In this document: positions 2,718-25,426 of the stretch, piece by piece | Position numbering within the stretch: the first letter of the stretch is position 1 | How the letters are laid out: every line of letters starts with the position of its first letter | IMG/VR virus record: IMGVR_UViG_3300042923_000474 | Span: 167,725 to 231,724 of that record | Direction: 5' to 3' (one strand) | Length of the DNA: 64,000 bases | Position numbers and translations under genes: made by a program | The notes under the pieces: model-generated | Seen by the model: the letters and a program-made list of their open reading frames with translations, nothing else | What the model was told of the DNA's origin: nothing | Database searches by the model: none

Positions 2718-3809
2718 TTACACGGAACCAAGACTGAGAGAGGTAAAGACCGTCGACAGAGCAGGCTTGCGGCCCACTGTGAGCGTGTAGGTACCCTTGA
2801 AGAGTGGAGAGGTAGCCTTTGCCTGCAGTGTCAACGTAAACGTCGTCAGGCTGTCCTGAGCCACTACAGGGAGGTCTTCCAGATCGTAGATCGTGAACGG
2901 GATGCCGGTGATCGCATTGATCGTTGGCAGAATGTGGTGAACCGTGGTGTCCTCCAAAACCTTGACAGTTGTGGGAAACGTGAAAGCCGCCATGCCTGAC
3001 AAATCAACACGGTTGTAGAACACATTCTTACTGATCGTACTCTGCCCATCCACGCTCGGGTAAGTCACGCCGCGCTTGATCTCACGAATACTGGATGGAC
3101 CGGTATTGAGCGATGCACTGTCGGCAAAGGTTACCGAGGCAGGTGTCAGGGTGCGGCCCAAGATAGTTCCCAATTGGGTCACAAAGGCCGCTTTGGCAAA
3201 GTACGCGGGCAGTGCAGCCAACGTAGCTGGCCAGGACAACCCCACAAGCTCCCAATCGCGGTCTGAGGGGCACATCCACCCAACGTTGACCTGAGTCCCC
3301 GGTTGGAAGTACAAAGAGTTCTCAGAGGCTTCCAGGGTGCATGGGCCATCTTGGGGGATGGGTGTACTCTTAAAGTCCGAAGCACTCAGTGCCGTACCGA
3401 AGGTAGCATTGAATCGTGGGATCACCTGATCGGTTGTGGTCATGACCTTGTCGTACTTCAGGGTATCGAGGTTACGATCCCGGACGATCTCCTTTAAAGG
3501 GAATCGGTAGTAGGCAAAGTCCAACGAACCACGGTAACCCGAGCTGGGCTTGAAAGTCACCGGCAGTTTGGCATTGAACCGATCTTTGACAGCAGCCGAT
3601 GGCACACCGAATGTCAGGTCAGCCAAGACGAAGCTTTTCTGCCACGTCGAGTTGATCGAGTTAACGATGTGCTGATTGACTTCTACTGTGAATGGATCTG
3701 TGGGGGGAGAGGACAAGACCGCGTAAGCCGCGATCTGATCCAGTTTCAACAACGCGGGTTGCTGTAAAACAGCATACGCCGCAATCTGATCAACTTTTAC
3801 AGTTGCCAT
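2718..3809 (-). CDS. Virion/tail-fibre shaft-adaptor protein with duplicated N-terminal motif and two repeat domains
   Basis: KVDQIAAYAVL / KLDQIAAYAVL repeat; YRGSLDFAYYR and FYNRVDL motifs of the array family. Confidence 0.7.
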   Translation of the reverse strand: MATVKVDQIAAYAVLQQPALLKLDQIAAYAVLSSPPTDPFTVEVNQHIVNSINSTWQKSFVLADLTFGVPSAAVKDRFNAKLPVTFKPSSGYRGSLDFAYYRFPLKEIVRDRNLDTLKYDKVMTTTDQVIPRFNATFGTALSASDFKSTPIPQDGPCTLEASENSLYFQPGTQVNVGWMCPSDRDWELVGLSWPATLAALPAYFAKAAFVTQLGTILGRTLTPASVTFADSASLNTGPSSIREIKRGVTYPSVDGQSTISKNVFYNRVDLSGMAAFTFPTTVKVLEDTTVHHILPTINAITGIPFTIYDLEDLPVVAQDSLTTFTLTLQAKATSPLFKGTYTLTVGRKPALSTVFTSLSLGSV

Positions 3810-3820
3810 CGACGTTCACC

Positions 3821-4954
3821 TTAGAGAGCGGCCGCCAACTTGACGGTGTATTTATCAAGTTCCGTTTTGGCAGGGGTGGCAGCAATCGACTTGAACGCCA
3901 TGCGACGCGCCAGACCAGTGGCCTGAAGTGCACGGGTGTAGTCGAACGTTTGCTGGAAGGTTGCCGTTTGGCTCTGGTCACTAGCACCGCTCTTGAGCAG
4001 GTCCAGCTTCAGGTTGGACGAGCCACTGGTAGCCAGCGCGTCTACCTGAACCATCAATGCCTTCACAGTATCCGTGTCGCTGATACCCGCAGTATCGAGG
4101 GTGACCACACCACTGGCATCGTTGTCGGTGACAGACACCGTGGTTGGTGTACCGACAGCCGCGTTGAAAGTGGCGTGTGCGTCGTTCAGGGATTCGACAA
4201 CAGTCTTGCCTGCCACGTCGGGCGTCCATGTGGGGGCATTGACGGCTTTGACCGGAAGGGACTTAAGACGCACAGGGCCAACCTTCTTGACCATATCGTT
4301 GGCTGCAATCTCGGACAGGAGAATGTCTTTGAAGGCATCGTCACGATACAGCTCAGCGTAACCGCCACCGTTCGTGGTCTGAACACCCACCCAGAACGCA
4401 ACCAGCTTAACCCCAGATGCGGCTAGGCGGGCGGAGATGGACAGGGTTTTCAGGTAGACGTTGTCGCGATAAACGGTGACTTCGCCGGTGACACGATCCA
4501 CGGTGATCTCAAAATAGTGACCAGTGCCGACTGTGTTTGGTGTGGCCCAGTCTGCCGCCATCACAATGGAAAGTGGGGCCAACGAATCAGAAAGACGCAG
4601 ACCAGCACTTGAGACCAGTGCGCCAGAGGTTCGAGCCTCGTGGGTCACACGAAAACCGAACGACAGCATCGAGGTGCCAGCCTGCAGCCCGGCTTCAGCG
4701 TTTTCCAACATGGCCTCAACGGTGGCCAAGTAGGTGCCGCCAGAGTAGTTGGACAGATTACGGGCACGTACCACCAATGCATCTGGGTCGGTGCCTTTGC
4801 GGATGCCAAAGGTTGGACCAGTAGGCGCGTAGGCGTAAGGGTCGGTATACCCCACCGTCATTCGACTGCCTTCGATCTGACCAACATAAGGGGTGTTGGT
4901 GTTGAAGAGACCGGTGGGGGCCTTGGTAAAACCGTAGGCTTCAATAATGCGCAT
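3821..4954 (-). CDS. Virion protein, lectin-type head (paralogue 3)
   Basis: YFEITVDRVTGEVTVYRDN, FKDI...VGP motifs. Confidence 0.65.
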   Translation of the reverse strand: MRIIEAYGFTKAPTGLFNTNTPYVGQIEGSRMTVGYTDPYAYAPTGPTFGIRKGTDPDALVVRARNLSNYSGGTYLATVEAMLENAEAGLQAGTSMLSFGFRVTHEARTSGALVSSAGLRLSDSLAPLSIVMAADWATPNTVGTGHYFEITVDRVTGEVTVYRDNVYLKTLSISARLAASGVKLVAFWVGVQTTNGGGYAELYRDDAFKDILLSEIAANDMVKKVGPVRLKSLPVKAVNAPTWTPDVAGKTVVESLNDAHATFNAAVGTPTTVSVTDNDASGVVTLDTAGISDTDTVKALMVQVDALATSGSSNLKLDLLKSGASDQSQTATFQQTFDYTRALQATGLARRMAFKSIAATPAKTELDKYTVKLAAAL

Positions 4955-4969
4955 GCTGAACTCCTAGGC

Positions 4970-5293
4970 TTATCGGCCGTAGTGCATGTACAAGCGGCGG
5001 CTGTCCTGACCTTCCAGATCCTGAAGGCGGATACCCACCACACGCTTGAACAAAGGGTTGGTCGGCAACATGTCGTCGTTATCACCTACATAGATGATCT
5101 CGGCGCCTTCGAGGGAGGTCAGGTCGGTACCGGTGGTAACCCACTTGCCCTGATCCTCGGTGGGGTCGTACTGACCCAGTGCGGCCGACAGCGTTGTAAG
5201 TTTGTCTTCCGGGATGGGGCCTAACTCCAGCTCATTCAAGAATTCCTCGAATGGGGCGAAGTCAACGCGGAAGAAGTTGGGCAAAGTTTGCAT
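4970..5293 (-). CDS. C-terminal half of a split tail-fibre-family paralogue
   Basis: SLEGAEIIYVG..LPTNPLFKRV..RLYMHY matches the C-domain of 6736-7620; own GGAG RBS. Confidence 0.75.
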   Translation of the reverse strand: MQTLPNFFRVDFAPFEEFLNELELGPIPEDKLTTLSAALGQYDPTEDQGKWVTTGTDLTSLEGAEIIYVGDNDDMLPTNPLFKRVVGIRLQDLEGQDSRRLYMHYGR

Positions 5294-5295
5294 GG

Positions 5296-5793
5296 TTAAC
5301 TCCAGTCGAAGTAGGGTTCGGGAATGGCTGCAGAGATCGACGGAATACCGCCACTGAACAACGTGCAGCTACCTTTCCAGAAGATACCCGTAGATTTGGC
5401 GGTCAATGGGATTTTGAATGTCCCGTCACCGTTATCGATCAGGGCCGCATCTTCCACATCGTCGGCATCAAACAACACGCCAAACGTTTTGAGGATGTAG
5501 GGGAAGCAGTCGTAAACACGGGCTGCGCCTGTCAGTACATTGGTCTGAGCAGTGCCCGCACTGGCGCCCAAGACGGCCAAGTCCACACGGTTGTACTTAA
5601 ACGACCGGTAGTCCTTATACGTTGGGTTGGTCCCTGTTGCCGTGAGTTTGATTTTGGTGTCAAACCCTTCTGGATCATTGGCCAGCGCCGAGGGCGGCGA
5701 GAGGGTCCAGAGGTTGGCAGCAGAATAAGCGAGGGCATGATTGGCCTGCAGCTGAATAAGCAGGCTGATCTTGGAACCTTGTTTTAAGTCCAT
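5296..5793 (-). CDS. N-terminal half of a split tail-fibre-family paralogue
   Basis: FKYNRVDL...D.ED...WKG matches the N-domain of neighbouring paralogues. Confidence 0.75.
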   Translation of the reverse strand: MDLKQGSKISLLIQLQANHALAYSAANLWTLSPPSALANDPEGFDTKIKLTATGTNPTYKDYRSFKYNRVDLAVLGASAGTAQTNVLTGAARVYDCFPYILKTFGVLFDADDVEDAALIDNGDGTFKIPLTAKSTGIFWKGSCTLFSGGIPSISAAIPEPYFDWS

Positions 5794-5800
5794 GGCTCAC

Positions 5801-6694
5801 CTACACCTTGTAGTGAAGCAAGAATTTACCCACGAACCAACCACCCGCCGCAGGTGGAGTAATGACCACCACATTGTTGTAGTCTGTGGAGTTTGCCTCG
5901 GGCACGTTTACGTTGGGTAGGGCATACTTGATGCAGCGAGCATCTTGCAGGCCACCCTCAGTCGCAGCCGGAACATAAGCGTTGAGCTTACGGCCAGCCA
6001 CCAGGCTCATGTACGACACCAAGTCTTTCGCCTGCGCAGTGCTGGGCAAAACCTGAAGCGTGGTCAAAGACTGCAGCAGTGCACTGAACTTGGAGAAGTC
6101 CGTCCCATAGGTCATGAAGTCGGCCATGGGTTTCGGGTTACCGCCCGGCGCTACTCCACTAACCAAGGTCAGCAGGAGCGGGGTGGTGGCAGGCACCTGT
6201 TCAGACACAGGCTTTTTGGTAGCCTTGCGGTTCCAGCGAAAAGACCCAATCCACGCGGGGTTGTTAGTCGGGAAGTTCCAAATGTAGCCGGTTTGCACCG
6301 TATTGGGAACCACTGCACGGTCCGAGTCCGAGGCGATGAACTTGGTGCCATACTTCTGGTTGATCCAGCGCATCGCCGATTCAATCTTGACGTTGACGCC
6401 GGTCAAGTCGTCAGGCGTGGCGTAGTCGTCGATTACCGGTACGCCTTGTTGGAACAAGACATCCGAAGACAGACGACGGTAGGTGAGCACGGTGGTGGCC
6501 ATGTAGCCGGAACCGGTACGAGGCATCACCGAAATTTGTGTGTTGCGAATCCCCTGACCAGTGATCGCTGCCGGAACACCCAAACGACAGTTATCTGGCG
6601 TGAGTTTGTACGGCAGCTGAGGATTGTCCCGATTGATCAAATCAAAGACCAATTCGGCAGATGTTTTTCGATAGTCTAAGTCCATCTTCTTCAT
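5801..6694 (-). CDS. Virion/tail-fibre family paralogue
   Basis: LVFDLINRDNP, TYRRL, PEANS..Y..V..GKFLLHY motifs. Confidence 0.75.
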   Translation of the reverse strand: MKKMDLDYRKTSAELVFDLINRDNPQLPYKLTPDNCRLGVPAAITGQGIRNTQISVMPRTGSGYMATTVLTYRRLSSDVLFQQGVPVIDDYATPDDLTGVNVKIESAMRWINQKYGTKFIASDSDRAVVPNTVQTGYIWNFPTNNPAWIGSFRWNRKATKKPVSEQVPATTPLLLTLVSGVAPGGNPKPMADFMTYGTDFSKFSALLQSLTTLQVLPSTAQAKDLVSYMSLVAGRKLNAYVPAATEGGLQDARCIKYALPNVNVPEANSTDYNNVVVITPPAAGGWFVGKFLLHYKV

Positions 6695-6707
6695 CCCAGT
6701 TGGAAGG

Positions 6708-6734
6708 GGCCGGGGAGTACCCGGCCACTATGCC
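6708..6734 (-). terminator. Intergenic hairpin with GCATA flank
   Basis: GGCCGGG/CCCGGCC stem, ACTATGCC adjacent. Confidence 0.6.
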
Positions 6735-6735
6735 G

Positions 6736-7620
6736 TCAGTCCGCCGAGTTCGGGTTATCCGGGTCGTTGAAGTGCAGGTAGAAGCGACCAGTGGGTGTGG
6801 TCACGCCGGTACGCAGCTCCAAGCACATCACGTACTTGTACGACTGGTTGGTGGGGAAGACCATGGTGTTCAGACCGCAGAAGATCACTTTGGCGCCGTT
6901 GAGCGACCAGGTGTTGCTGCTGTCGGAGTTGTTCCACAGTGTGGCGCCAGGACCCTGATCGAGTGCCTTAAGGGCCGTCACCAGGATGTCAGCATTGGCG
7001 GAAGACAGTACGCCTTCGGCCATGGCCAGCAATTGGTCACGGTAACCTGTCAGGTTCAGCGGGTAGGCGTACAGCAGTGCCGAGGTCTGAGTCGCCGGAT
7101 CGGCCACTGGGTAGTTCAAACCATTCAACGCCTTGACCGTGGTCAGGGTGTCGATGTTTGCACCACCTTGAACGACATCAAAGGACAACTGACCCAGCCA
7201 CAGAGGCGAAGCGTCCTTGGCCTTGATGGTCACGGTACCGGCACCTTGGCCATCCAGCACCACAGGCTCGCTGAGAATATCCTGCGGACCCAGCACGAGG
7301 CCGAAGTAGTACAGGATGTTCGACAACAGGTCGATGGTCGTTGCAGGTTGGTAAACCGGCAGAGGGCGGGTAGGACGGAACTTGGCGAAGTCTGCCAACT
7401 TCAAGCGATCGTATTTAACGGTCGCCTTACCTTCGAAACCAGCGCCTTGTTTCGGCGTTACCTTGGCGTAGGTGTTTTTGGTGGTAGTACCCTCCATCCA
7501 CGTCCCGGCGATCGGCTTGGGATCGGACCAGGTGAGGTTGGCTGCAGTGAACTGCGTGGTACTGTTGGCCGCATTCAAATAGTTGAAGAGGGCCTGCTTG
7601 GAATCTACGAAAACAGACAT
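6736..7620 (-). CDS. Virion/tail-fibre family paralogue
   Basis: KYDRLKL, LNGLNYP, GRFYLHFN motifs. Confidence 0.75.
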   Translation of the reverse strand: MSVFVDSKQALFNYLNAANSTTQFTAANLTWSDPKPIAGTWMEGTTTKNTYAKVTPKQGAGFEGKATVKYDRLKLADFAKFRPTRPLPVYQPATTIDLLSNILYYFGLVLGPQDILSEPVVLDGQGAGTVTIKAKDASPLWLGQLSFDVVQGGANIDTLTTVKALNGLNYPVADPATQTSALLYAYPLNLTGYRDQLLAMAEGVLSSANADILVTALKALDQGPGATLWNNSDSSNTWSLNGAKVIFCGLNTMVFPTNQSYKYVMCLELRTGVTTPTGRFYLHFNDPDNPNSAD

Positions 7621-7632
7621 GGCTGCCTCCTC

Positions 7633-8520
7633 TTAAAGGTTGAAGTACAGAATCCACTTGCCTGCGAGGCGTGGGTTGCTGGCGTCGGTGACCGTGAGGA
7701 TCTTCGCGTAGGCAAAACCTGGCTTGTTCGCCTCGGGGTGTATGGCGCTCGGTAGCGCCACCGCGGAGAACGTGCCGTTGGACATGTTCCACGGAGCTGT
7801 ATCGGCATTGTAGGTGCCCACAGCAATCGGCCAACCCGTCAAGCGAGTGATCTCGGCAATTACGCCGCCCTGACCACTGAGGACAACCGTGTTGCTAGCG
7901 GTCCAGCCTTGGGCCAGTGCGAACTCAGTGAAGTCCAGACCTGCAAAGACAAACTCAGGACGCAGACTGCGATCTGGCTTGGCCACGAAGTCGTTACCGC
8001 CTGGCCATTGGGCGCCATCCAGTTCAGTCACGGTCAGAATGTCGATACCGACTTGCTGCAGGCCACGGTTCCAGGTGACGGTGAAGCTACCCACGTAGGC
8101 CAGGTTATCGGCAGTGGCCGTCCAAACGCGTGCGGCACCGCTGTTGGTAGAGTTCCAGACGCTGCCCGTGATGCCGGACACTGTCAGGTTCACGCCGTAC
8201 AGTTGGTTGACGTAACCGATGGCCTGGGCCAGGGTCATGGAGGCGCCATCGTTCAGCCAGCGAGTGAATGCGATGTTGTTACCACGGAACAGGCTGGTCA
8301 GATCGCGGCGACGATACAGAACTTCCAGCACGCCTCGGTACTTGCTGGAGGACTTGGCCGTGATCTTGAGCTTGGTATTGCGACCGAAACTGTCAGCGGC
8401 AACAACCACGGGTTTACCGAAGATGAAGTCGGTGGTATTGATGGGCCATGGCAGCGTCGGGTTATCCGCGTTGATCTGCGCGATGGCCTCTTCGAGAGGA
8501 CTGCCTGTGAGAATTGGCAT
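7633..8520 (-). CDS. Virion/tail-fibre family paralogue
   Basis: INADNP, YRGVLEVLYRRRDL, PEANK..GKWILYFN. Confidence 0.75.
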   Translation of the reverse strand: MPILTGSPLEEAIAQINADNPTLPWPINTTDFIFGKPVVVAADSFGRNTKLKITAKSSSKYRGVLEVLYRRRDLTSLFRGNNIAFTRWLNDGASMTLAQAIGYVNQLYGVNLTVSGITGSVWNSTNSGAARVWTATADNLAYVGSFTVTWNRGLQQVGIDILTVTELDGAQWPGGNDFVAKPDRSLRPEFVFAGLDFTEFALAQGWTASNTVVLSGQGGVIAEITRLTGWPIAVGTYNADTAPWNMSNGTFSAVALPSAIHPEANKPGFAYAKILTVTDASNPRLAGKWILYFNL

Positions 8521-8530
8521 GTGCTTTTAC

Positions 8531-9298
8531 CTAGGCTGGATTGTAGTGGAAGTACATGGCGCCTTGTAAAAGGCCGCTCTGCACAGTCGACTGAATAACG
8601 ACGCGTTTGAACACAGGGTTGGCATCAGGTACTTCTGCCGTTGCCTTGTCCACAACTTTGCCTTTAACCCAGTCAGGGATACCCATGGCACGAGTCACTG
8701 TTTGAACGAGCGCCCAATCGGAATACTCGCCCTTGGCAGTTGGCTTCAATGCATCCTGGATACCAGAGAAGTCCGCACCCCACGTCCACATCCGGCTGGA
8801 TTGTCGGTTGGTATTGTTGGGGTGTTTGAAGATGTCCAGATCGGTCTTGCCAATCATCGAGTCCAGCCACGAGGGACCGAACGACAGATTGAGGTCCAGA
8901 CCACCGAACCACTGCAACGAGGTCTCTGCAATCTCGATGCGCGAAGAGATCGCCTCACCATCACCCAGCACAGGTGGGGTGTACTCTTCGAAGTCTTCGG
9001 GGTTGATGTCGAGGCCAAACTTGTTAGCCAGGCCCAGCACAATCATTTCACGGTTCATGGCTTCCAGAGAACGGAAGTCAAAAGACGTCACGTAGTCTGC
9101 CAGATTCATGCGGTCATAGTAGACATCGACCTCACCGTAGTAACCGCGCCCCGGAATACCGGAGATGGTCACCAGTGTGTTGCGGTCGTGCTCTGTGGTC
9201 GGTTGGGGTACCGAGAACGAGAGCCGCTTTTCCGTGAACTCCTTGGGTGGAGTGAACATGTCGTTTAGAACGACAAACATCCGTTCGGCGTTAGCCAT
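8531..9298 (-). CDS. Virion/tail-fibre family paralogue
   Basis: YYGEVDVYYDRMNL, PDANPVFKRV, MYFHYN. Confidence 0.75.
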   Translation of the reverse strand: MANAERMFVVLNDMFTPPKEFTEKRLSFSVPQPTTEHDRNTLVTISGIPGRGYYGEVDVYYDRMNLADYVTSFDFRSLEAMNREMIVLGLANKFGLDINPEDFEEYTPPVLGDGEAISSRIEIAETSLQWFGGLDLNLSFGPSWLDSMIGKTDLDIFKHPNNTNRQSSRMWTWGADFSGIQDALKPTAKGEYSDWALVQTVTRAMGIPDWVKGKVVDKATAEVPDANPVFKRVVIQSTVQSGLLQGAMYFHYNPA

Positions 9299-9308
9299 GG
9301 TTCACCCC

Positions 9309-10151
9309 CTATGCCAGGTCTGGATCGGGTTCATTGAAGTGAAGCGTCAGCTCACCTGTCAGACCCAAGCAGTTGGCATCCACCAGCATGACCTTAATGA
9401 AGCGGTCGTACTTCGGGTTGGCTTCATTCGGATGCTCGGCGGAAATACCCACCATGCGAATCGTTGCACCGGCCAGACTGAAACGGCTGATGCCTTCGAT
9501 CTTCCAATCGTCACCTGTCTGCGTTTTAAGCAGAGGACCCAACACGTTCACCGGGGCATCACCCACCACGATGTCCTTGAGCTGCTCGTAGGAGGTCGTG
9601 AAGTCACGCCAGTACGAATAGATCTGGGCATACGGTCGAGTGGTGGTCGCCGATGGGTAGCGCAGACCGTTGAGACGGGTCACCTTGAGGTAGTCCGCCA
9701 ACTGGTAGCCACCCGGACGGGTACCCACCGAAACAGTGCCAGTCCATGCCAAGCTGGTAGGCAGTGCCTCCAACTCAACCACGCCGCCTTGAGCTTTCTC
9801 TTCGTCAGTCAGCGCACGGATCAGTACATCTTTATCCGTGAGCAGTGTGCCGTAGCGTTTGTTCATGGCCGCAATGATGTCACTGGTGCTTTGCGGTTCT
9901 TTGACCGGCACCAACAAGGTCACTTGCGCAGCCAAGTCGGACAATGGGTTGCGATGGTAGCGGAACGTCTCGGAACCGGAGTACGCTGTCTCTTGGTTTT
10001 TGGCAGTGAGCACGATCGTCGTATTGAACTGCCCTACCGGAGTAATCGCGATAGGTGCTTCGAAGATGTATTCACTGGCCACCAAGTCAAGCTTGTTCAG
10101 CCGGTTGATCGATTCCACCATCACATCCAAAGAGGGTTTATAAAGCGACAT
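9309..10151 (-). CDS. Virion/tail-fibre family paralogue
   Basis: YSGSETFRYHR, LNGLRYP, EANPKYDR, LTLHFN. Confidence 0.75.
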   Translation of the reverse strand: MSLYKPSLDVMVESINRLNKLDLVASEYIFEAPIAITPVGQFNTTIVLTAKNQETAYSGSETFRYHRNPLSDLAAQVTLLVPVKEPQSTSDIIAAMNKRYGTLLTDKDVLIRALTDEEKAQGGVVELEALPTSLAWTGTVSVGTRPGGYQLADYLKVTRLNGLRYPSATTTRPYAQIYSYWRDFTTSYEQLKDIVVGDAPVNVLGPLLKTQTGDDWKIEGISRFSLAGATIRMVGISAEHPNEANPKYDRFIKVMLVDANCLGLTGELTLHFNEPDPDLA

Positions 10152-10162
10152 AATCGTGCCCT

Positions 10163-10996
10163 TTAGGAAGTGAGGTTATAGTGGAAGTAGGCGATACCCG
10201 AGTAGTCCATGGTTTGCACGTTGGCAATATCCTTGATCACCTGAACAAGCACTCGATCGTAGTCCTTGTTAGCTTCCGGTACCTGCGCCGTACTGTAGTC
10301 GAACATGGGGTTGTTCCATGCCACGGGCCAGTTCGAGTAACCGAACGAAGCCATCAGTGTCCGCATGGCGTTCCCGTCGTTAACGATGTTGTAGAACGGG
10401 TGCTTGCGAACTTTGGCGTAATGTTCCGACCAGTCTTCACTGTAAGTGAACAACGTGATCGGTCGCTTGTTCAGCGTGTCCAGCGTTTGACCCGGATGCA
10501 ACATGACATCGAGATCACGCATGACGACAACCTCAGACAGCAGAGGACGACGTCGGGTAAAGCGAATAACAAACTGGCCGATGTAGGACAATGAAGTGGT
10601 AAGGGCTACGAGGGGGATGTTGACCTCTTCGTTTTCGCCCAACCAGCTGTAGTCAACCTGCTCGAAGTCATCGACATCCAACTGGATGCCCAACTCTTGG
10701 CCGATATACGGCAACATCGAATGCAGGTTTCCGTTACTCAGCCCATTGATCCGGGGACGGATATCACCAAACGCGCTTGTAAGGTCCATCCGCTCGTACT
10801 CAACGGGGACCATGCCTTCATAGGTCGTATCGGGAATCGGCACAACGACACTACGGACCAGGGTAGGTAGGGGACCCTGGACAAACTTAGGCGTGGTAAA
10901 AAGCACATCGTCCGGGTTCAACGGGGAGGGAAGGACATTCTGCTGATTGATGAGATCAACTAAAACGTCCCTGCCCTTTCCAGGGACAAGGATCAT
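10163..10996 (-). CDS. Virion/tail-fibre family paralogue
   Basis: Start moved to ATG 10996 (AGGAG RBS); LVDLINQQN, YEGMVPVEYERMDL, PEANKDYDRV, YFHYN. Confidence 0.75.
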   Translation of the reverse strand: MILVPGKGRDVLVDLINQQNVLPSPLNPDDVLFTTPKFVQGPLPTLVRSVVVPIPDTTYEGMVPVEYERMDLTSAFGDIRPRINGLSNGNLHSMLPYIGQELGIQLDVDDFEQVDYSWLGENEEVNIPLVALTTSLSYIGQFVIRFTRRRPLLSEVVVMRDLDVMLHPGQTLDTLNKRPITLFTYSEDWSEHYAKVRKHPFYNIVNDGNAMRTLMASFGYSNWPVAWNNPMFDYSTAQVPEANKDYDRVLVQVIKDIANVQTMDYSGIAYFHYNLTS

Positions 10997-11091
10997 TTTT
11001 CTCTCCTGAAACCGTGATCTGAAGGGAAGGAATGTGTGCCGGATAGGAAACATTCACATAGGATTAGCCCTTGCTGAAATAAGATAGGTAA

Positions 11092-11123
11092 GGGCATAAA
11101 AGAGAGTGGCCTTTCGGCCACTC
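11092..11123 (-). terminator. Hairpin terminator
   Basis: GAGTGGCC-GAAA-GGCCACTC then TCTTTTATGCCC on minus strand. Confidence 0.75.
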
Positions 11124-11156
11124 CCAGTGAGTCCCTTCGTTCACGCACGTCAGGTC

Positions 11157-11720
11157 TTACTCGGCCGGCGGGGTTGCCGGAGGAGTTGGGTAGTTCAGAC
11201 CAGACAGAGTGGTCACGGTGATCACGTCGGACAATGGGATGTCTTCAGCGGTCAAGGTCACGCTCAGGGATTCCAGGAAGACGTAGGAGTCTGCGTCAGC
11301 CGGGATCTGGATGATCTTGGTTTCGTTGGGAGTACCTTCCCAATCACCGATGTCGCCGTCGATGTAGTCGTCGGCGGTCAGGTTGATGCCGAGTGCAGTG
11401 TTGATCTCGTCGATCAGGTCTGCGAACTTGGCAGCGTCACCTACCGGGATCTCCAGCGCGCCAGTGATGCCAGCGGCGGCGATGAAGCCGTCGAGAGCCA
11501 GGCGGTTGTAGTTCACGGCCACTTCACCGGTATAACCGGAGTTAGGCAGAGCCGACACTTCCAACGTGGTGTTGGCCACTGGGTTCTGACCAGTAGCGGC
11601 TTGAGGCACGCCCAGACCCATTACGGTGCTGGAGATGGTCTTGCCAGGGTTGTCGAAGTTGATGAGATCGAAAATGATCTCTTTTGGAGCTTTCTTGAAG
11701 TCACTGACATGGAGGGCCAT
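11157..11720 (-). CDS. Short virion protein, N-domain-only member of the family
   Basis: Start ATG 11720; EIIFDLINFDNP, YTGEVAVNYNRL, LSGLNYP; highly biased codon usage. Confidence 0.7.
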   Translation of the reverse strand: MALHVSDFKKAPKEIIFDLINFDNPGKTISSTVMGLGVPQAATGQNPVANTTLEVSALPNSGYTGEVAVNYNRLALDGFIAAAGITGALEIPVGDAAKFADLIDEINTALGINLTADDYIDGDIGDWEGTPNETKIIQIPADADSYVFLESLSVTLTAEDIPLSDVITVTTLSGLNYPTPPATPPAE

Positions 11721-11817
11721 GGGGACACCTTTTGGTTGCTGCGTGATGGAAAAAGGCCCCTTAGTAAAGGACCACATATCATAGTAAAGTTATAGACGAC
11801 CGCCTAGGGGCATTTAA

Positions 11818-18624: not shown

Positions 18625-19232
18625 ACCTAGGGTGCCATGCCGACTTAGCCCACTATCAAATTCGGCACATAAGGAAAACAAGGAGCATCACACGAACTAC
18701 TTGATCCGCTGGGCACTAATCCTGCTCGGGTCAGTAGTCGCAGTACCAACTATTCTTACGCGGAATGCTACCGTTCTCTTGCCATGGACCGTGGAGGTCC
18801 CGCAGGTTGAAACGCGTTCTTCGTTTGCACAGTTGGTATGGAAAAGTGTGTTGGCTGGGATCGGCAAACTGCCTACCCAAACCCACAGCACTTTCGCGAC
18901 TGCCTGACAAACTCACAGGCCGCTTAGCCAAAGTAGAGGTTTAAATGGACCTCATTAGGGATGGCTCTCAGCCTACCTGTATATCTGCACAGAATCCTGC
19001 TCGCGAGGACAAGGCATCCTGAGTTCCCACGGACCCAGACCCTGTACCTTACCCAGGCCTAGGCAGTGACCGCTCGACGATACCCCTATTCCATACGCTT
19101 CCCTGATCTCTCTAGCACCAGCTGATGCGCTCAGCCGGTTTCACTGACGAGACTTGAGTGGCTATGAGTCTAGTGGGTATTCGTTGGGTATTCATTTTCC
19201 ATTTATGCCCTTGGGTCCTTTTAAAGAGATTT

Positions 19233-21905: not shown

Positions 21906-22472
21906 ATGGACAAGTCGTTTTTTACCAAGGTAACGGGTGACACTATCACTGCAGGGCGCCTCACTTTGGCCACCCTGCGGCTCACACACCGCTTGGGGTT
22001 CAGACGAATATTCTCGTTCGTCTATCGCCACTTCACAAAGGAGGGTCGTAACTGGAAAACCATGGAGACTTTGAGTCATGAGGGAGAACGGGTCGTCCTT
22101 GAGATGATCTCGGATAACCCAACCCTCAGCTGGCTTGAGCGTCGCATGCAAACACACGTCGAGGTTTCAGTCGACCGAAGGACGTGGTGGGCGTTACTTG
22201 AGATCTTTGAGGATCATCAGGTAACTTACATGGTGCAAGACTTTTTAAAGCACGGTCGGTCAGAGGACTTGCAAGCCTTTGGCCGTACATGTACAGGATT
22301 GGCTGATCAAATGTTGCGTGTCTCCAGCACTCACCCGACTCGTGGGGCTGTCGTTACGGAACCCGATTATATTCGCGCCGTTGCTATTCAGCAGCTGGCT
22401 GCATGCTTCGCGACCTTTCCACTTTTGTGTCGCACTGAAGATCAAATCAGGCATTGTCTGAAGGCTTATTGA
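21906..22472 (+). CDS. Hypothetical protein
   Basis: Start ATG 21906. Confidence 0.75.
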   Translation: MDKSFFTKVTGDTITAGRLTLATLRLTHRLGFRRIFSFVYRHFTKEGRNWKTMETLSHEGERVVLEMISDNPTLSWLERRMQTHVEVSVDRRTWWALLEIFEDHQVTYMVQDFLKHGRSEDLQAFGRTCTGLADQMLRVSSTHPTRGAVVTEPDYIRAVAIQQLAACFATFPLLCRTEDQIRHCLKAY

Positions 22473-22485
22473 TCTACCAATTTTG

Positions 22486-22522
22486 GGAGGTATCTATTGA
22501 GGTACCTCCCTCTTTGTTTTAT
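22486..22522 (+). terminator. Hairpin terminator
   Basis: GGGAGGTA/TACCTCCC then TCTTTGTTTTATG. Confidence 0.6.
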
Positions 22523-22539
22523 GACCCCAAGGAGCGAAA

Positions 22540-23217
22540 ATGGATAAGCCCGTTGTTCGTTTGGCATTGCTGTCTACTGACCATGAAGACATGGAAGGTT
22601 ACGAAGCGAGCCTGCGTACGTTGTTCGAACAAACCGTTACACGCATTGGCCACTTCAGCTGGGAGATTGACAACCCACGCCTTCTAGTGAACCACGGCGG
22701 TCGTGACCATTACGACGATGGCGATAAACACGCTGTCATGATGCATGTGCAGATTCCAAAGCGCATGGAACGTGATGTGTCGCTGTTCCAGGAACTGTTC
22801 GTCAACACTTACGCCAACCGTGAGTTTGCCGATCCTGACATCAACAAGACCTTCACTCTGGCCTTGTTCGAAGTTGTACCAGTGGGCAAGCAGAGCTATA
22901 CCCTGGGCCGCGTCAAGCTGATCACCAACGTGACCTTTGCTCGTATCGGCATTGGTAGTGGGACCTACGGTGGACAGGATACTGTCATGCCTCTGGCGCG
23001 GTACCACGACATTCCGGTGGATTGGAAGTCGATCCCTGAACGGCCTGCCTATATCCCACCGTTGGCCGATGAAGAAGGTACCAGCACCTTCACCATCTCC
23101 GGTCGTGAGCTGATCGCCAACGCTAAGGCGCGTCAGCGTCTAAGCGACATGGCCCACGCGATGGTGCAAACCATCTCTGCTGCAGAGCCAAAAGCGAAAG
23201 CCCCGGCCAAGAAGTAA
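22540..23217 (+). CDS. Hypothetical protein
   Basis: AAGGAG RBS; ends at UACG hairpin. Confidence 0.85.
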   Translation: MDKPVVRLALLSTDHEDMEGYEASLRTLFEQTVTRIGHFSWEIDNPRLLVNHGGRDHYDDGDKHAVMMHVQIPKRMERDVSLFQELFVNTYANREFADPDINKTFTLALFEVVPVGKQSYTLGRVKLITNVTFARIGIGSGTYGGQDTVMPLARYHDIPVDWKSIPERPAYIPPLADEEGTSTFTISGRELIANAKARQRLSDMAHAMVQTISAAEPKAKAPAKK

Positions 23218-23224
23218 CCGTCTG

Positions 23225-23253
23225 CCTCCACCCTACGGGGTGGAGGTTTATGG
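23225..23253 (+). terminator. Hairpin terminator
   Basis: CCTCCACCC-TACG-GGGTGGAGG-TTTATG. Confidence 0.8.
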
Positions 23254-23279
23254 TCTTGGGTTCTTTTTTAACGCATTTT

Positions 23280-23303
23280 GAAACCTAGATTATCGACTTG
23301 CAT
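23280..23303 (+). promoter_or_regulatory. Putative phage early promoter
   Basis: GAAACCTAGATTATCGACTTGCAT before sspB. Confidence 0.7.
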
Positions 23304-23323
23304 ACACCTCTAAAGGAATTGTC

Positions 23324-23767
23324 ATGGCAACCACTCACCAACGCATTCGTCCTTCTCTGACCCGGCATCTGCTGTTGGGTTACCTGCAATGGTTCCAGGA
23401 GGTCGAAGACGCTGAGAAGTGCTACATCATCGTAGACACCACACGCTGCCCATTGCCTGAGCATCTGCACAAGTTCGTGGACGATCAGAACATGATCATT
23501 CTGGACATCTCGGGTCCTGCGGTGCGTGACTTCGAGGCCACTGCGGAGACGTTGAGCTTCTCCTGCAAGTTCACGGGCGTGGATACCCACATGGAGATTG
23601 AGTGGCCGGCCATCTATTCGATCTATTGCATCACTCGTGATCAGCAGCCGATCATGCAGATGATGATGGGTGGCTATACGCCGCACGAGTTCAAAACCGT
23701 TAAACAAGAAACCCCACCTACCGCATCCGAAGCCAAGCCCGGCCCAGGTCTGCGTGTCGTCAAGTAA
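23324..23767 (+). CDS. sspB: SspB-like ClpXP adaptor
   Basis: YLQWF..YIIVD..IILDISGPAV..LSFSCKFTG..IYSIY core and C-terminal GLRVVK (ClpX-binding XB motif). Confidence 0.85.
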   Translation: MATTHQRIRPSLTRHLLLGYLQWFQEVEDAEKCYIIVDTTRCPLPEHLHKFVDDQNMIILDISGPAVRDFEATAETLSFSCKFTGVDTHMEIEWPAIYSIYCITRDQQPIMQMMMGGYTPHEFKTVKQETPPTASEAKPGPGLRVVK

Positions 23768-23776
23768 GGACTGAAT

Positions 23777-25120
23777 ATGAAAGAGCCAATCGGCCTCGGC
23801 CAGTTGAACAAATTGCAACGTCTGATCAAGCGTTTGCTGGAACACGGCATCCCGAAAGATGACCGTACCGGTGTGGGTACTCTGAGTGAGTTCGGCCACA
23901 TCGAACGTTACAACTTGGAGGAAGGCCATCCTCATGAGTCTGCCAAGTTCACCCCGTTCAAGATCAACGTGGCTGAACTGCTGTGGATCATCTCCGGCAG
24001 CACTCGCCTGAAGTTCCTCAAGGAGTACGGTTGCCACGTGTGGGACGAATGGGTTAAGCCTGGCACTGAAGTGTGGGGTAAGACCTACACGTACGCTGAG
24101 CGCTTGGACATTCTGAACAAGCGTGTGGAAAGCGGCAAGATCCCAGAAGCCGACAAAGATCACTACGTCGATACCTGGCTGAGTGTCAGCAACGGCGCCG
24201 TGATGACGGAAGAAGATGTGGTCAACATGTTGAACCACTTCGAGATCCCAACTCAGGAACTGATCGACGGTGAACTGGGCCCTGTGTACGGTCAGCAGTG
24301 GCGCAACATTGTTGACACTCGCGTGATTGAAGATCATGAGCGCGAGGAGTATGAGGCACGCGGTTACGAAATGATCGGCTCTATGCTGACCATGGAAGAT
24401 CTGTCCGACATGAAGTGCAATGGCAGCAAGACGGTCATGCAGCGTAAGATCGACCAGCTGGCCAATGTGATCGAACAGCTCAAAACCAAGCCAGACGATC
24501 GCGGCATTATCGTCAATGCTTGGCACGTGCCTGATCTGGATCAAATGGCGCTGCGCCCTTGTCACACGCTGTTCCAATTCGAAACCACTCGTCGTCCTTG
24601 GGATGAGGTGTTCTCTGAGATTCTTCAGGAAGACCACTACGAGGAATTCGACAGCGTCGTTGTTGGCATGTCTTCGGACAGTAAGGGCGGTGAAGATTGG
24701 ATCGAGGCACAGAAGCCTGGCGGTGGGTGGCGTCACCCAGACTACTACAAGACCGGTTATGCGTTTGCCGAACTTAAGGGTCTGTCCACTCGCAAGCTGA
24801 ACTGCCTGCTGTACATGCGTTCGAACGACAGCTTCTTGGGTCGTCCGTTCAACGTGTCTCAGTACGCACTGCTGACCCGCATGGTTGCGCAAGTGGTGAA
24901 CATGAACCCTGGTGAGTTTATCCTCGTCAACGGTGATGTGCACCTTTACAACTCGCACATTGAGCAGGCCAAGGAGCTGTTGAAACAAGACGGTACCTTG
25001 CCACTGCCTTGGGTGAAGATCAACCCAGAAGTTCTGACCATCGACGGTTTCCAGGTCAGCGACTTTGAGCTTTTAAATTACAAGCATGGGCCACGCATTG
25101 GCGCCCCCGTAGCTGTATAA
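23777..25120 (+). CDS. thyA: Thymidylate synthase with three insertions
   Basis: DDRTGVGT, ELLW, WDEW, LGPVYGQQWR, RPCH, RSND..LG.PFN, GDVHLY. Confidence 0.95.
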   Translation: MKEPIGLGQLNKLQRLIKRLLEHGIPKDDRTGVGTLSEFGHIERYNLEEGHPHESAKFTPFKINVAELLWIISGSTRLKFLKEYGCHVWDEWVKPGTEVWGKTYTYAERLDILNKRVESGKIPEADKDHYVDTWLSVSNGAVMTEEDVVNMLNHFEIPTQELIDGELGPVYGQQWRNIVDTRVIEDHEREEYEARGYEMIGSMLTMEDLSDMKCNGSKTVMQRKIDQLANVIEQLKTKPDDRGIIVNAWHVPDLDQMALRPCHTLFQFETTRRPWDEVFSEILQEDHYEEFDSVVVGMSSDSKGGEDWIEAQKPGGGWRHPDYYKTGYAFAELKGLSTRKLNCLLYMRSNDSFLGRPFNVSQYALLTRMVAQVVNMNPGEFILVNGDVHLYNSHIEQAKELLKQDGTLPLPWVKINPEVLTIDGFQVSDFELLNYKHGPRIGAPVAV

Positions 25121-25127
25121 CCAAACT

Positions 25128-25158
25128 GGCCGAGGGGATGACCCTCGGCCTTTATGCC
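25128..25158 (+). terminator. Hairpin terminator
   Basis: GGCCGAGGG/CCCTCGGCC-TTTATGCC. Confidence 0.8.
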
Positions 25159-25171
25159 ACAAGGAGTTCCC

Positions 25172-25426
25172 ATGTTACTCGCGAAGGGCTTTGCATATCT
25201 GTTGTTCACAACCACGGTTATAACTGGTACCACCAAACCGACCGTGGATACCGACACCACCCACATTCCAGATAAAGCAGGCTGCGTTCAAGCAGTGGCC
25301 GACTTTATCAATGAGGGGGCCTACAAGAACTATGGCACCTACGGTTCTTCTGAAATCAAACTCGGTGACGGGTTGGTGATGAAGAAAACCGCGAAGTGCT
25401 CCAAGATCGGACAAGGGGAAGAGTAA
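25172..25426 (+). CDS. Small exported/membrane protein
   Basis: AAGGAG RBS; hydrophobic N-terminus, two Cys. Confidence 0.7.
   Translation: MLLAKGFAYLLFTTTVITGTTKPTVDTDTTHIPDKAGCVQAVADFINEGAYKNYGTYGSSEIKLGDGLVMKKTAKCSKIGQGEE

What the first reader, a model, noticed from the sequence alone, without database searches (positions are those of the whole stretch)
23324..23767. Phage SspB adaptor with intact ClpX-docking tail but rewired substrate groove
Seen: SspB core plus C-terminal KPGPGLRVVK. Known: the LRVVK XB motif tethers E. coli SspB to the ClpX N-domain, and the LNIAPRA segment contacts the ssrA tag. Here that segment is LDISGPA. The gene has its own promoter motif. Inference: an early-expressed adaptor that redirects host ClpXP to new substrates (defence or regulatory proteins), or competitively blocks host SspB.
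Basis: partly seen in the sequence, partly recalled or inferred. Interest (0 to 1): 0.62.

Follow-up and report, generated by a model that had tools for sequence, protein, structure and literature searches.

The report
Jumbo-phage SspB-like ClpX adaptor gene
A giant nucleus-forming phage carries a very diverged copy of the bacterial SspB protein. It keeps the short tail that hooks SspB onto the host ClpXP protease. Such phage genes are already annotated, but nobody has shown what they do.

Summary
Window 23324-23767 (+) encodes a 147-aa protein with an SspB fold and a flexible linker. Its C-terminus, P-x-LRVVK, matches the E. coli SspB ClpX-binding (XB) tail.

The window belongs to a 231.7-kb phiKZ-like (chimallin) jumbo phage with no ClpP or ClpX of its own. 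The gene sits behind a hairpin and one of 19 copies of a long phage-specific promoter-like motif. The same motif precedes the chimallin gene and a non-virion RNA polymerase gene, so early expression is likely by analogy with phiKZ.

Syntenic orthologues in related metagenomic phages share only 27-32% identity, against 37-82% for neighbouring genes. They still end in LRVVK or LSVVK.

The "rewired groove" argument is weak as stated. Haemophilus SspB binds ssrA with LNLSASA at that segment, and bacterial-looking homologues carry LDVS. However, 34 of 59 positions conserved in bacterial SspBs differ here, so the cargo is unknown.

SspB-like genes are already annotated in phiKZ relatives, Erwinia phage RAY (gp039, cytoplasmic) and pf16, all without functional data. 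This is a new, very divergent member of a known but uncharacterised kind. Redirection of ClpXP versus decoy action remains untested.

The parts
23225..23246 (+). Hairpin with a 9-bp G+C-rich stem and a 4-nt loop. It lies just after the upstream 225-aa gene and is followed by T-rich sequence. It is a likely terminator or insulator before the sspB-like transcription unit.
   Evidence: Sequence read; terminator-like site reported (8 found against 2.7 expected in the region).
23269..23310 (+). Phage-specific promoter-like motif with core ACCTAGATTATC..TTG. It is one of 19 copies in the 231.7-kb genome, all on the + strand and all upstream of start codons.
   Evidence: PWM scan: 19 hits on + and 0 on -, scoring 30-50 bits; this copy scores 45.8 bits. 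The motif also precedes the chimallin gene and the nvRNAP beta-like gene. It is conserved upstream of the orthologues in L003-L011.
23313..23317 (+). Shine-Dalgarno-like AAGGA, 6 nt before the ATG.
   Evidence: Sequence read; flagged.
23324..23767 (+). CDS of the SspB-like protein (147 aa, P0001), stop codon included.
   Evidence: A 97%-identical copy in another metagenome differs by 7 synonymous and 4 non-synonymous codons.
23357..23665 (+). SspB-fold core, residues 12-114: an N-terminal helix plus a beta-sandwich. It includes the LDISGPA segment (residues 60-66, nt 23501-23521).
   Evidence: AlphaFold2 model, per-block pLDDT 89-96 across residues 11-110. Foldseek against PDB: the top 13 hits are all SspB.
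23666..23740 (+). Low-confidence Pro/Thr/Ala-rich linker, residues 115-139, about 25 aa. The E. coli linker is about 45 aa by my own count from the P0030 sequence.
   Evidence: pLDDT 55-76; alignment A1.
23741..23764 (+). XB-type ClpX N-domain docking tail, GPGLRVVK-COOH. It shares the P-x-L-R-V-V-K pattern with the E. coli SspB terminus.
   Evidence: L143 and V146 are invariant in the phage-clade alignment. Canonical tails were tallied.
23777..25120 (+). Thymidylate synthase gene (447 aa, with a large insertion). It starts 9 nt after the sspB-like stop and is probably co-transcribed. The sspB-like/ThyA adjacency is conserved in related phages.
   Evidence: Pfam PF00303 E 3.9e-81; synteny.

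Best explanation
The gene encodes a cytoplasmic SspB-family protein of a nucleus-forming (chimallin, phiKZ-like) jumbo phage. It is probably made early, from a promoter class shared with the chimallin and non-virion RNA polymerase genes.

Its flexible C-terminal tail (P-x-LRVVK) docks onto the zinc-binding N-domain of the host's ClpX, as the XB tail of bacterial SspB does. Its diverged, fast-evolving SspB-fold core binds a peptide cargo. That cargo is probably not, or not only, the canonical ssrA tag.

The net effect would be to re-programme host ClpXP substrate choice in favour of the phage. Chosen proteins would be delivered for degradation. Host SspB and other N-domain-dependent clients would be displaced as an unavoidable side effect.

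Shown here: the fold, the tail, the absence of phage ClpX and ClpP, the promoter-like motif, the synteny, and fast core divergence with tail retention. Inferred: ClpX binding, timing, dimerisation, and the identity and fate of the cargo.
For: - SspB fold and family.
- The tail is identical to the E. coli XB pentapeptide, with Pro at position -7. The same form is the most common bacterial one (58 of 80).
- The XB tail is bound by the ClpX zinc-binding domain, and tethering to the N-domains is the main stabiliser of SspB binding (PMC8138137; PMC9963277).
- The phage genome has no ClpP or ClpX zinc-finger domain.
- Syntenic orthologues (P0003, P0004) share only 32% and 27% identity, while 12-13 neighbouring genes share 37-82%. 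They still end in LSVVK and LRVVK. That pattern fits a constrained docking module joined to a diversifying recognition module.
- 7 synonymous against 4 non-synonymous codon changes to a 97% relative suggest a gene still under constraint, though the counts are small.
- The motif is shared with the chimallin gene (phrog_4795, E 8e-73) and with the homologue of phiKZ gp71/gp73, the nvRNAP beta-like subunit. It is conserved in front of the orthologues.
- The Erwinia phage RAY homologue gp039 is diffusely cytoplasmic, outside the phage nucleus (PMC10299810). ClpXP is a cytoplasmic enzyme (general knowledge).
- 34 of 59 canonical conserved core positions are changed.
Against: - There is no experimental or computational evidence of ClpX binding for this protein.
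- The host is unknown, so its ClpX N-domain and ssrA tag could not be examined.
- I could not obtain the list of ssrA-contacting SspB residues or PDB coordinates. 'Diverged groove' therefore rests on family conservation, not on mapped contacts.
- The scaffold residues of the cited segment are kept (I58, L60, I62, A66, V67). The related P0003 keeps a canonical-looking F-x-A-R-F-G-G strand. ssrA binding is therefore not excluded.
- The linker is about half the E. coli length.
- Early timing is by analogy with phiKZ, not measured.
Confidence: 0.5

Rival explanations
1. Decoy or inhibitor. The protein uses its (probably bivalent, if dimeric) XB tails only to occupy ClpX N-domains. This shuts out host SspB and other N-domain-dependent adaptors and substrates. 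It could protect phage proteins or stop ClpXP-triggered defences such as antitoxin degradation. No cargo would be delivered.
For: - The tail is conserved while the core drifts fast. A decoy would constrain the tail and fold but not a specific groove.
- Many canonical conserved polar residues are lost.
- The short linker might hinder productive hand-off (from memory of linker-length studies; not checked here).
- From general knowledge, other phages do inhibit host proteases, for example the T4 and T7 Lon inhibitors.
Against: - A bare XB peptide or any small dimer would be enough for this job. Yet the whole SspB fold, with high-confidence core packing and conserved scaffold residues, is kept across very diverged phages.
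- Clade-specific conserved segments flank the core: an N-terminal R-x-R-x-S motif and a post-core E-[FY]-x-x-V-K motif. These suggest a retained binding function.
Confidence: 0.22
2. Host-like SspB. The protein still binds the host's ssrA tag and simply boosts clearance of ssrA-tagged truncated proteins during infection, for proteostasis or amino-acid recycling. The sequence divergence would reflect an old acquisition and adaptation to an unknown host's tag.
For: - The same fold and the same tail.
- The cited segment lies within the natural range of ssrA-binding SspBs.
- pf16 gp18 is a near-canonical SspB. It passes an NCBIfam equivalog cut-off (166 bits against 135) and ends in LRVVK. Phages therefore do carry host-like copies.
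Against: - The ssrA tag is conserved, so orthologues that bind it should keep their groove. Instead this is the most diverged gene in its block, at 27-32% identity.
- 34 of 59 canonical conserved positions differ. The literature says these positions are mostly groove and dimer interface (PMC9963277). Examples are R15L, N24V, N54D, P86E and N98D.
- It scores 37 bits against the 135-bit equivalog cut-off.
Confidence: 0.18
3. The SspB fold has been co-opted for a job unrelated to ClpXP, and the tail is a relic or serves another partner.
For: - Some phage SspB-fold proteins lack a terminal XB. Xanthomonas phage LucasX_196 has none. phiKZ gp232 and Psa21 bury an L-T-[VL]-I-[KQ] motif before GGKK and carry long extra regions.
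Against: - The exact LRVVK-COOH is retained in this clade despite about 70% divergence elsewhere.
- Terminal L-x-[VILM]-[VI]-K is present in 16 of the 24 distant relatives that were fetched.
Confidence: 0.08

Closest known systems
Bacterial SspB (E. coli / H. influenzae ClpXP specificity-enhancing factor; PDB 1OX9, 1OU8, 8ET3)
   Same: - The same fold: TM-score 0.64-0.78 by target, rmsd 2.1-3.7 A.
- The same domain order: core, flexible linker, then C-terminal XB.
- An identical LRVVK terminus with Pro at position -7.
   Different: - Only about 22% identity.
- 34 of 59 conserved core positions are changed.
- It fails all NCBIfam SspB equivalog cut-offs.
- The linker is about 25 aa against about 45 aa.
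- It is phage-encoded, next to thyA rather than sspA, and behind a phage promoter motif.
[quoted passage not shown]
   Same: - It is encoded by a chimallin-type jumbo phage.
- It is about 150 aa, with an SspB core plus a terminal XB-like tail (K-P-T-L-T-V-V-K).
- It is an accessory, non-core gene. RAY gp039 is cytoplasmic (PMC10299810).
   Different: - tblastn with P0001 against the phage collection did not retrieve the RAY-like phages at E <= 1e-3, so sequence similarity is weak.
- The genomic neighbourhood differs.
- Neither protein has been tested functionally.
phiKZ gp232 and homologues in PA7, PhiPA3, 201phi2-1, Psa21, Phabio and Noxifer
   Same: An SspB-fold N-terminal domain in nucleus-forming Pseudomonas jumbo phages, with an XB-like motif near the C-terminus (P-K-L-T-V-I-K in phiKZ gp232).
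   Different: - These proteins are longer: 238-373 aa for five of them (Noxifer is 143 aa), with extra regions.
- In phiKZ gp232 and Psa21 the motif is followed by GGKK, so it is not at the free C-terminus.
- All but Noxifer ('Stringent starvation protein B') are annotated as hypothetical or uncharacterized.
Pseudomonas phage pf16 gp18 (T4-like phage; PMC5587285)
   Same: A phage-borne SspB ending in P-T-L-R-V-V-K.
   Different: - pf16 gp18 is near-canonical: 53% identical to E. coli SspB, Pfam 120 bits, and it passes an NCBIfam equivalog cut-off. It looks like a recent capture from a host.
- The window's protein is an old, highly diverged lineage.

Membership tests
SspB domain family (Pfam PF04386) | Significant match to the family profile above the gathering score | tested here: met
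   28.8 bits against a cut-off of 27, E 1.5e-6, residues 13-108. The margin is thin. It is corroborated by PDB phmmer hits to SspB only and by eight NCBIfam SspB models being the only hits.
SspB domain family (Pfam PF04386) | SspB three-dimensional fold (N-terminal helix plus beta-sandwich) | tested here: met
   AlphaFold2 model with per-block pLDDT 89-96 across residues 11-110. The Foldseek top 13 PDB hits are all SspB, probability 1.00, TM-score 0.64-0.78 by target.
Functional SspB-type ClpXP tethering adaptor | C-terminal XB motif (L-x-[VIL]-[VI]-K at the free C-terminus) after a flexible linker | tested here: met
   The protein ends in GPGLRVVK-COOH. This is identical to the E. coli terminus and to 58 of 80 bacterial SspB tails. 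The linker has low pLDDT.
Functional SspB-type ClpXP tethering adaptor | Physical binding of the tail to the ClpX N-terminal zinc-binding domain | tested here: inconclusive
   This needs a binding assay. One co-folding job gave no verdict (see Tried and rejected). The host and its ClpX are unknown.
Functional SspB-type ClpXP tethering adaptor | Homodimer giving bivalent tethering | not tested
   The N-terminal helix is present. Several canonical conserved helix residues differ (R15L, A16G, Y18L). No dimer prediction was run.
Bacterial SspB orthologue (NCBIfam equivalogs NF008762-NF008770, 'ClpXP protease specificity-enhancing factor') | Score above the curated equivalog cut-off | tested here: not met
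   The best score is 37 bits against a cut-off of 135 (NF008769). The others score 18-34 bits against 162-258. As controls, E. coli SspB scores 322 against 202, and pf16 gp18 scores 166 against 135.
Bacterial SspB orthologue (ssrA-tag delivery factor) | Conservation of the ssrA-binding groove and binding of the ssrA tag | tested here: inconclusive
   15 identical, 10 similar and 34 different residues at the 59 core positions that are at least 80% conserved in 26 non-redundant gammaproteobacterial SspBs. Which of these positions touch ssrA could not be mapped, because neither coordinates nor the structure papers were accessible. The LDISGPA segment by itself is not diagnostic.
Phage SspB-like proteins (PHROG 8945) | Match to the PHROG profile over its full length, in a phage genome | tested here: met
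   E 2.5e-6, residues 15-145 on profile positions 13-147 of 149. The genome is a complete 231.7-kb virus record carrying chimallin, phiKZ-type RNAP and terminase.

The most novel reading that the evidence does not exclude
This fast-evolving, early, cytoplasmic SspB-like protein could be a phage 'degrader'. It would plug into the conserved N-domain of host ClpX through an invariant XB tail. It would use a diversifying core to feed host defence or regulatory proteins to ClpXP. That would be the bacterial counterpart of eukaryotic viruses hijacking E3 ligases. Its presence in many nucleus-forming jumbo phages, including phiKZ gp232 and RAY gp039, would make it a common counter-defence strategy.
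Probability: 0.25. Interest if true: 0.75.

Novelty: new member of a known kind. Interest (0 to 1): 0.38.

Why it matters
No phage-encoded adaptor that redirects a host AAA+ protease was found to be functionally characterised in the literature I could search. Yet SspB-fold genes sit in phiKZ, 201phi2-1, PhiPA3, RAY and many other model jumbo phages.

This window adds three things:
- A very diverged lineage that still keeps the exact XB terminus.
- An evolutionary signature of tail conserved and core diverging fastest in its gene block.
- A promoter class shared with chimallin and nvRNAP genes.

Together these turn a routine annotation into a testable hypothesis about how nucleus-forming phages manage the host cytoplasm. 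If the core has new specificity, such proteins could also serve as orthogonal degradation adaptors for synthetic biology, as E. coli and Caulobacter SspB already do.

Tried and rejected
- **Co-folding of the tail with ClpX.** I folded E. coli ClpX residues 1-60 (two copies) with residues 100-147 of the protein. The result was no verdict (score 0.06, mark 0.34).
- **Sigma-70 promoter scan** of 22400-25300 found no site. The promoter-like element is phage-specific instead.
- **Searches for close relatives.** megablast of the region against GenBank phages found nothing. tblastn of P0001 found only 3 weak hits. The IMG/VR peptide-pattern scan found none. The word search found only one 97% relative. 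Relatives came from the exhaustive HMMER search, which gave 28 hits at E <= 1e-3 among 1.84 billion representatives.
- **Word search with E. coli SspB** returned only Enterobacteriaceae among the 120 listed hits, too close for conservation analysis. A genome-contig scan replaced it.
- **tRNA and tmRNA in the phage genome:** none by ARAGORN. There is no phage ssrA.
- **ssrA-contact residues of SspB.** The 2003 and 2005 structure papers are not held, and PMC517522 is not held. The accessible papers gave only two facts. A56V or A56F weakens ssrA binding. The conserved residues are mostly groove plus dimer interface.
- **My crude longest-ORF gene caller** picked spurious antisense ORFs, such as the 567-aa antisense frame 23285-24988. 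I did not use it for annotation.
- **Host identity** could not be determined. The closest cultured-phage DNA polymerases are only 33-35% identical and come from Xanthomonas, Burkholderia and Erwinia phages.

Full report
**1. The observation**

Window 23324-23767 (+) is an ATG-initiated ORF of 147 codons.
- An AAGGA ribosome-binding site lies 6 nt upstream.
- A 567-aa antisense frame (23285-24988, -) overlaps it. That frame also runs antisense to the strongly supported thymidylate synthase gene, and no evidence supports it as coding.

**2. It is an SspB-family protein, but a very distant one**

Sequence evidence:
- Pfam SspB (PF04386) matches residues 13-108 at 28.8 bits, just above the 27-bit cut-off.
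- PHROG 8945, 'stringent starvation protein SspB-like', matches end to end.
- phmmer against the PDB finds only SspB chains, at E 2e-4 for H. influenzae and 1e-3 for E. coli in 8ET3.
- NCBIfam returns only the SspB equivalog models. All score far below their cut-offs, the best being 37 bits against 135. E. coli SspB and phage pf16 gp18 pass.

Structure evidence:
- An AlphaFold2 model built on 25 homologues has mean pLDDT 83.6. Per-block pLDDT is 89-96 across residues 11-110 and 55-76 for the last 37 residues.
- Foldseek's 13 best PDB matches are all SspB, with TM-score 0.64-0.78 by target and rmsd 2.1-3.7 A.

Rarity:
- The exhaustive HMMER search of 1.84 billion representatives found only 28 proteins at E <= 1e-3.
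- The word search found a single 97% relative.

**3. The tail**

E. coli SspB (P0030, taken from NC_000913.3) ends in R-P-A-L-R-V-V-K. P0001 ends in G-P-G-L-R-V-V-K. The last five residues and the Pro at position -7 are identical.
- Among 80 gammaproteobacterial SspB loci, 58 end in LRVVK. Most of the rest are L-x-[VIL]-[VI]-K variants.
- Among the 24 distant homologues I fetched, 16 end in L-x-[VILM]-[VI]-K. Three more carry near variants.
- The literature at hand states that the XB tail is bound by the ClpX zinc-binding domain (PMC8138137). It also states that SspB is stabilised on ClpXP mainly by this tethering (PMC9963277).
- The linker between core and tail is about 25 residues, Pro/Thr/Ala-rich and of low confidence. 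The E. coli linker is about 45 residues.

**4. Genomic setting**

The window is bases 167725-231724 of a complete 231,724-bp virus record with terminal repeats.

The genome encodes:
- a chimallin or 'nuclear shell protein' (phrog_4795, E 8e-73);
- phiKZ-type multisubunit RNA polymerase pieces, namely phrog_3148 (1451 aa) and phrog_3295 (701 aa);
- a large terminase;
- arrays of phiKZ-like virion structural paralogues.

The 701-aa RNAP piece matches phiKZ gp71 plus gp73. From my own knowledge these form the beta-like subunit of the non-virion polymerase.

Its DNA polymerase-like protein is only 33-35% identical to those of Xanthomonas, Burkholderia and Erwinia jumbo phages. This is therefore an uncultured chimallivirus-like lineage of unknown host.

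The genome has no ClpP, no ClpX zinc-finger domain, and no tRNA or tmRNA. Any protease partner must be the host's.

**5. Regulation**

Upstream of the gene lie a 9-bp G+C-rich hairpin (23225-23246) and a 42-nt motif (23269-23310).
- A position-weight scan finds 19 copies of the motif in the genome. All are on the + strand, score 30-50 bits, and lie 5-147 nt upstream of start codons. None is on the - strand.
- The copy before this gene scores 45.8 bits.
- The same motif precedes the chimallin gene and the nvRNAP beta-like gene.
- From my knowledge of the phiKZ transcription literature, those two genes are early and are read by the injected virion polymerase. The motif is therefore most simply an early promoter. 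This is an inference by analogy.
- The motif is conserved in front of the orthologous gene in five diverged relatives.
- thyA starts 9 nt after the stop codon, so the two genes are probably co-transcribed.

**6. Evolution**

P0003 (ending in LSVVK) and P0004 (ending in LRVVK) are syntenic orthologues on 79-140-kb phage contigs. The local gene order is the same, running 183, 288, 188 and 229 aa genes, then the SspB-like gene, then ThyA.
- By blastp the SspB-like gene is the most diverged of the 13-14 shared genes in both comparisons.
- It scores 32% against a neighbour range of 41-82%, and 27% against a range of 37-73%.
- In the clade alignment, L143 and V146 of the tail are invariant.
- Compared with a 97% relative, the gene shows 7 synonymous and 4 non-synonymous codon changes. 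That suggests a gene still under constraint, though the counts are small.
- The pattern of a fixed docking tail, a retained fold and a rapidly changing surface is what a modular adaptor in a host-virus conflict would show. Relaxed constraint on a decoy's core would look similar.

**7. The 'rewired groove' claim**

The cited difference, LNIAPRA against LDISGPA, is not diagnostic.
- H. influenzae SspB, whose complex with ssrA is solved, has LNLSASA there.
- Other homologues, including bacterial-looking ones, have LDVS, LNISGS or LNVSGH.
- The only accessible mutational data concern A56. Bulky A56V or A56F substitutions weaken ssrA binding (PMC12304284). The phage has Ser at this position, as Haemophilus does.

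On a broader test, I took 26 non-redundant gammaproteobacterial SspBs.
- At the 59 core positions that are at least 80% conserved among them, P0001 is identical at 15, similar at 10 and different at 34.
- The differences include invariant canonical residues: R15L, A16G, N24V, P28C, V41E, P42H, N54D, P86E, N98D, G99Q, G101P and F104M.
- The hydrophobic scaffold is kept: W20, I51, L53, A59, F72, F76 and G78.
- PMC9963277 reports that only the dimer interface and the ssrA groove are highly conserved in SspB. Some of these changes must therefore lie in one or the other.
- I could not map which, because neither the coordinates nor the structure papers were available.

Altered specificity is therefore plausible, but it is not shown.

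**8. Comparison with what is known**

Phage SspB-like genes are not new.
- pf16 gp18 was described in 2017 (PMC5587285). Here it proves near-canonical and ends in LRVVK.
[quoted passage not shown] It ends in L-T-V-V-K.
- tblastn with E. coli SspB finds 78 phage records. They include phiKZ gp232 (302 aa, with L-T-V-I-K followed by GGKK) and Ralstonia FLC4-3B gp94 (ending in L-S-V-V-K).
- Foldseek against viral models finds SspB folds in PA7, PhiPA3, 201phi2-1, Phabio, Noxifer, Psa21 and others.
- I found no functional study of any of them.

The window's gene is a new and unusually diverged member of an annotated but uncharacterised kind.

**9. Mechanism and rivals**

| Reading | Weight |
|---|---|
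| ClpX-tethered adaptor with non-canonical cargo that re-programmes host ClpXP, displacing host SspB as a by-product | about 0.5 |
| Pure N-domain decoy | 0.22 |
| Host-like ssrA delivery | 0.18 |
| ClpX-unrelated role | 0.08 |

One co-folding attempt of the tail with the E. coli ClpX N-domain gave no verdict and is not used as evidence.

**10. Verdict**

The tail, the promoter and the phage context are right. The groove argument is weak as stated, and the function is untested.
- Novelty: new member of a known kind.
- Interest is moderate (0.38), mainly because it sharpens a testable question about a gene family common in model jumbo phages.

Noticed in passing
Whole genome G000. Copies inside the window start at 19222, 23269, 34434, 39272, 39596, 47374, 54596 and 62648 (+).: A 42-nt promoter-like motif (core ACCTAGATTATC..TTGA) occurs 19 times, only on the + strand and always upstream of start codons. 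It precedes the chimallin gene and the nvRNAP beta-like gene. It is conserved in related metagenomic phages and is a candidate early (virion-RNAP) promoter of this lineage.
   Followed up: partly
window 23777-25120 (+): The thymidylate synthase homologue is 447 aa, and Pfam matches it in two stretches. It therefore carries a large insertion relative to the 266-position Pfam profile. The insertion-bearing form (431-456 aa) is conserved next to the SspB-like gene in related phages. Between the window and the 97%-SspB relative, thyA has far more nucleotide differences (130) than its neighbours (7-35), which hints at mosaicism.
   Followed up: no
window 2718-11777 (-): An array of about eight diverged paralogues (24-35% identity, 165-363 aa) matches phrog_1037 and phrog_2935, 'virion structural protein'. 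It resembles the paralogous head or inner-body protein families of phiKZ-like phages.
   Followed up: partly
window 23285-24988 (-): A 567-aa open frame runs antisense to the SspB-like and thyA genes. It is almost certainly a non-coding shadow frame, and similar long antisense frames are common across this 53% G+C genome.
   Followed up: partly
L106:1471-2379 (phiKZ gp232), L013:1477-2223 (Psa21 PSA21_299): phiKZ gp232 and Psa21 gp299 have an N-terminal SspB-like core and long extra regions. An XB-like L-T-[VL]-I-[KQ] motif is followed by GGKK, so it is not at the free C-terminus. The Psa21 gene lies two genes upstream of an annotated FtsH-like gene.
   Followed up: partly
window 25128-25150: A perfect G+C-rich palindromic hairpin lies just after thyA. 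The scan calls it terminator-like on the - strand. It may end the sspB-like/thyA transcription unit.
   Followed up: no
P0001 residues 5-8 and 123-126 (nt 23336-23347 and 23690-23701): The model pairs a short N-terminal strand with a post-core strand. Both segments (R-x-R-x-S and E-[FY]-x-x-V-K) are conserved in the closest phage orthologues but absent from bacterial SspB. This could be a clade-specific clasp near the core. Confidence is only moderate, with pLDDT 56-76.
   Followed up: no
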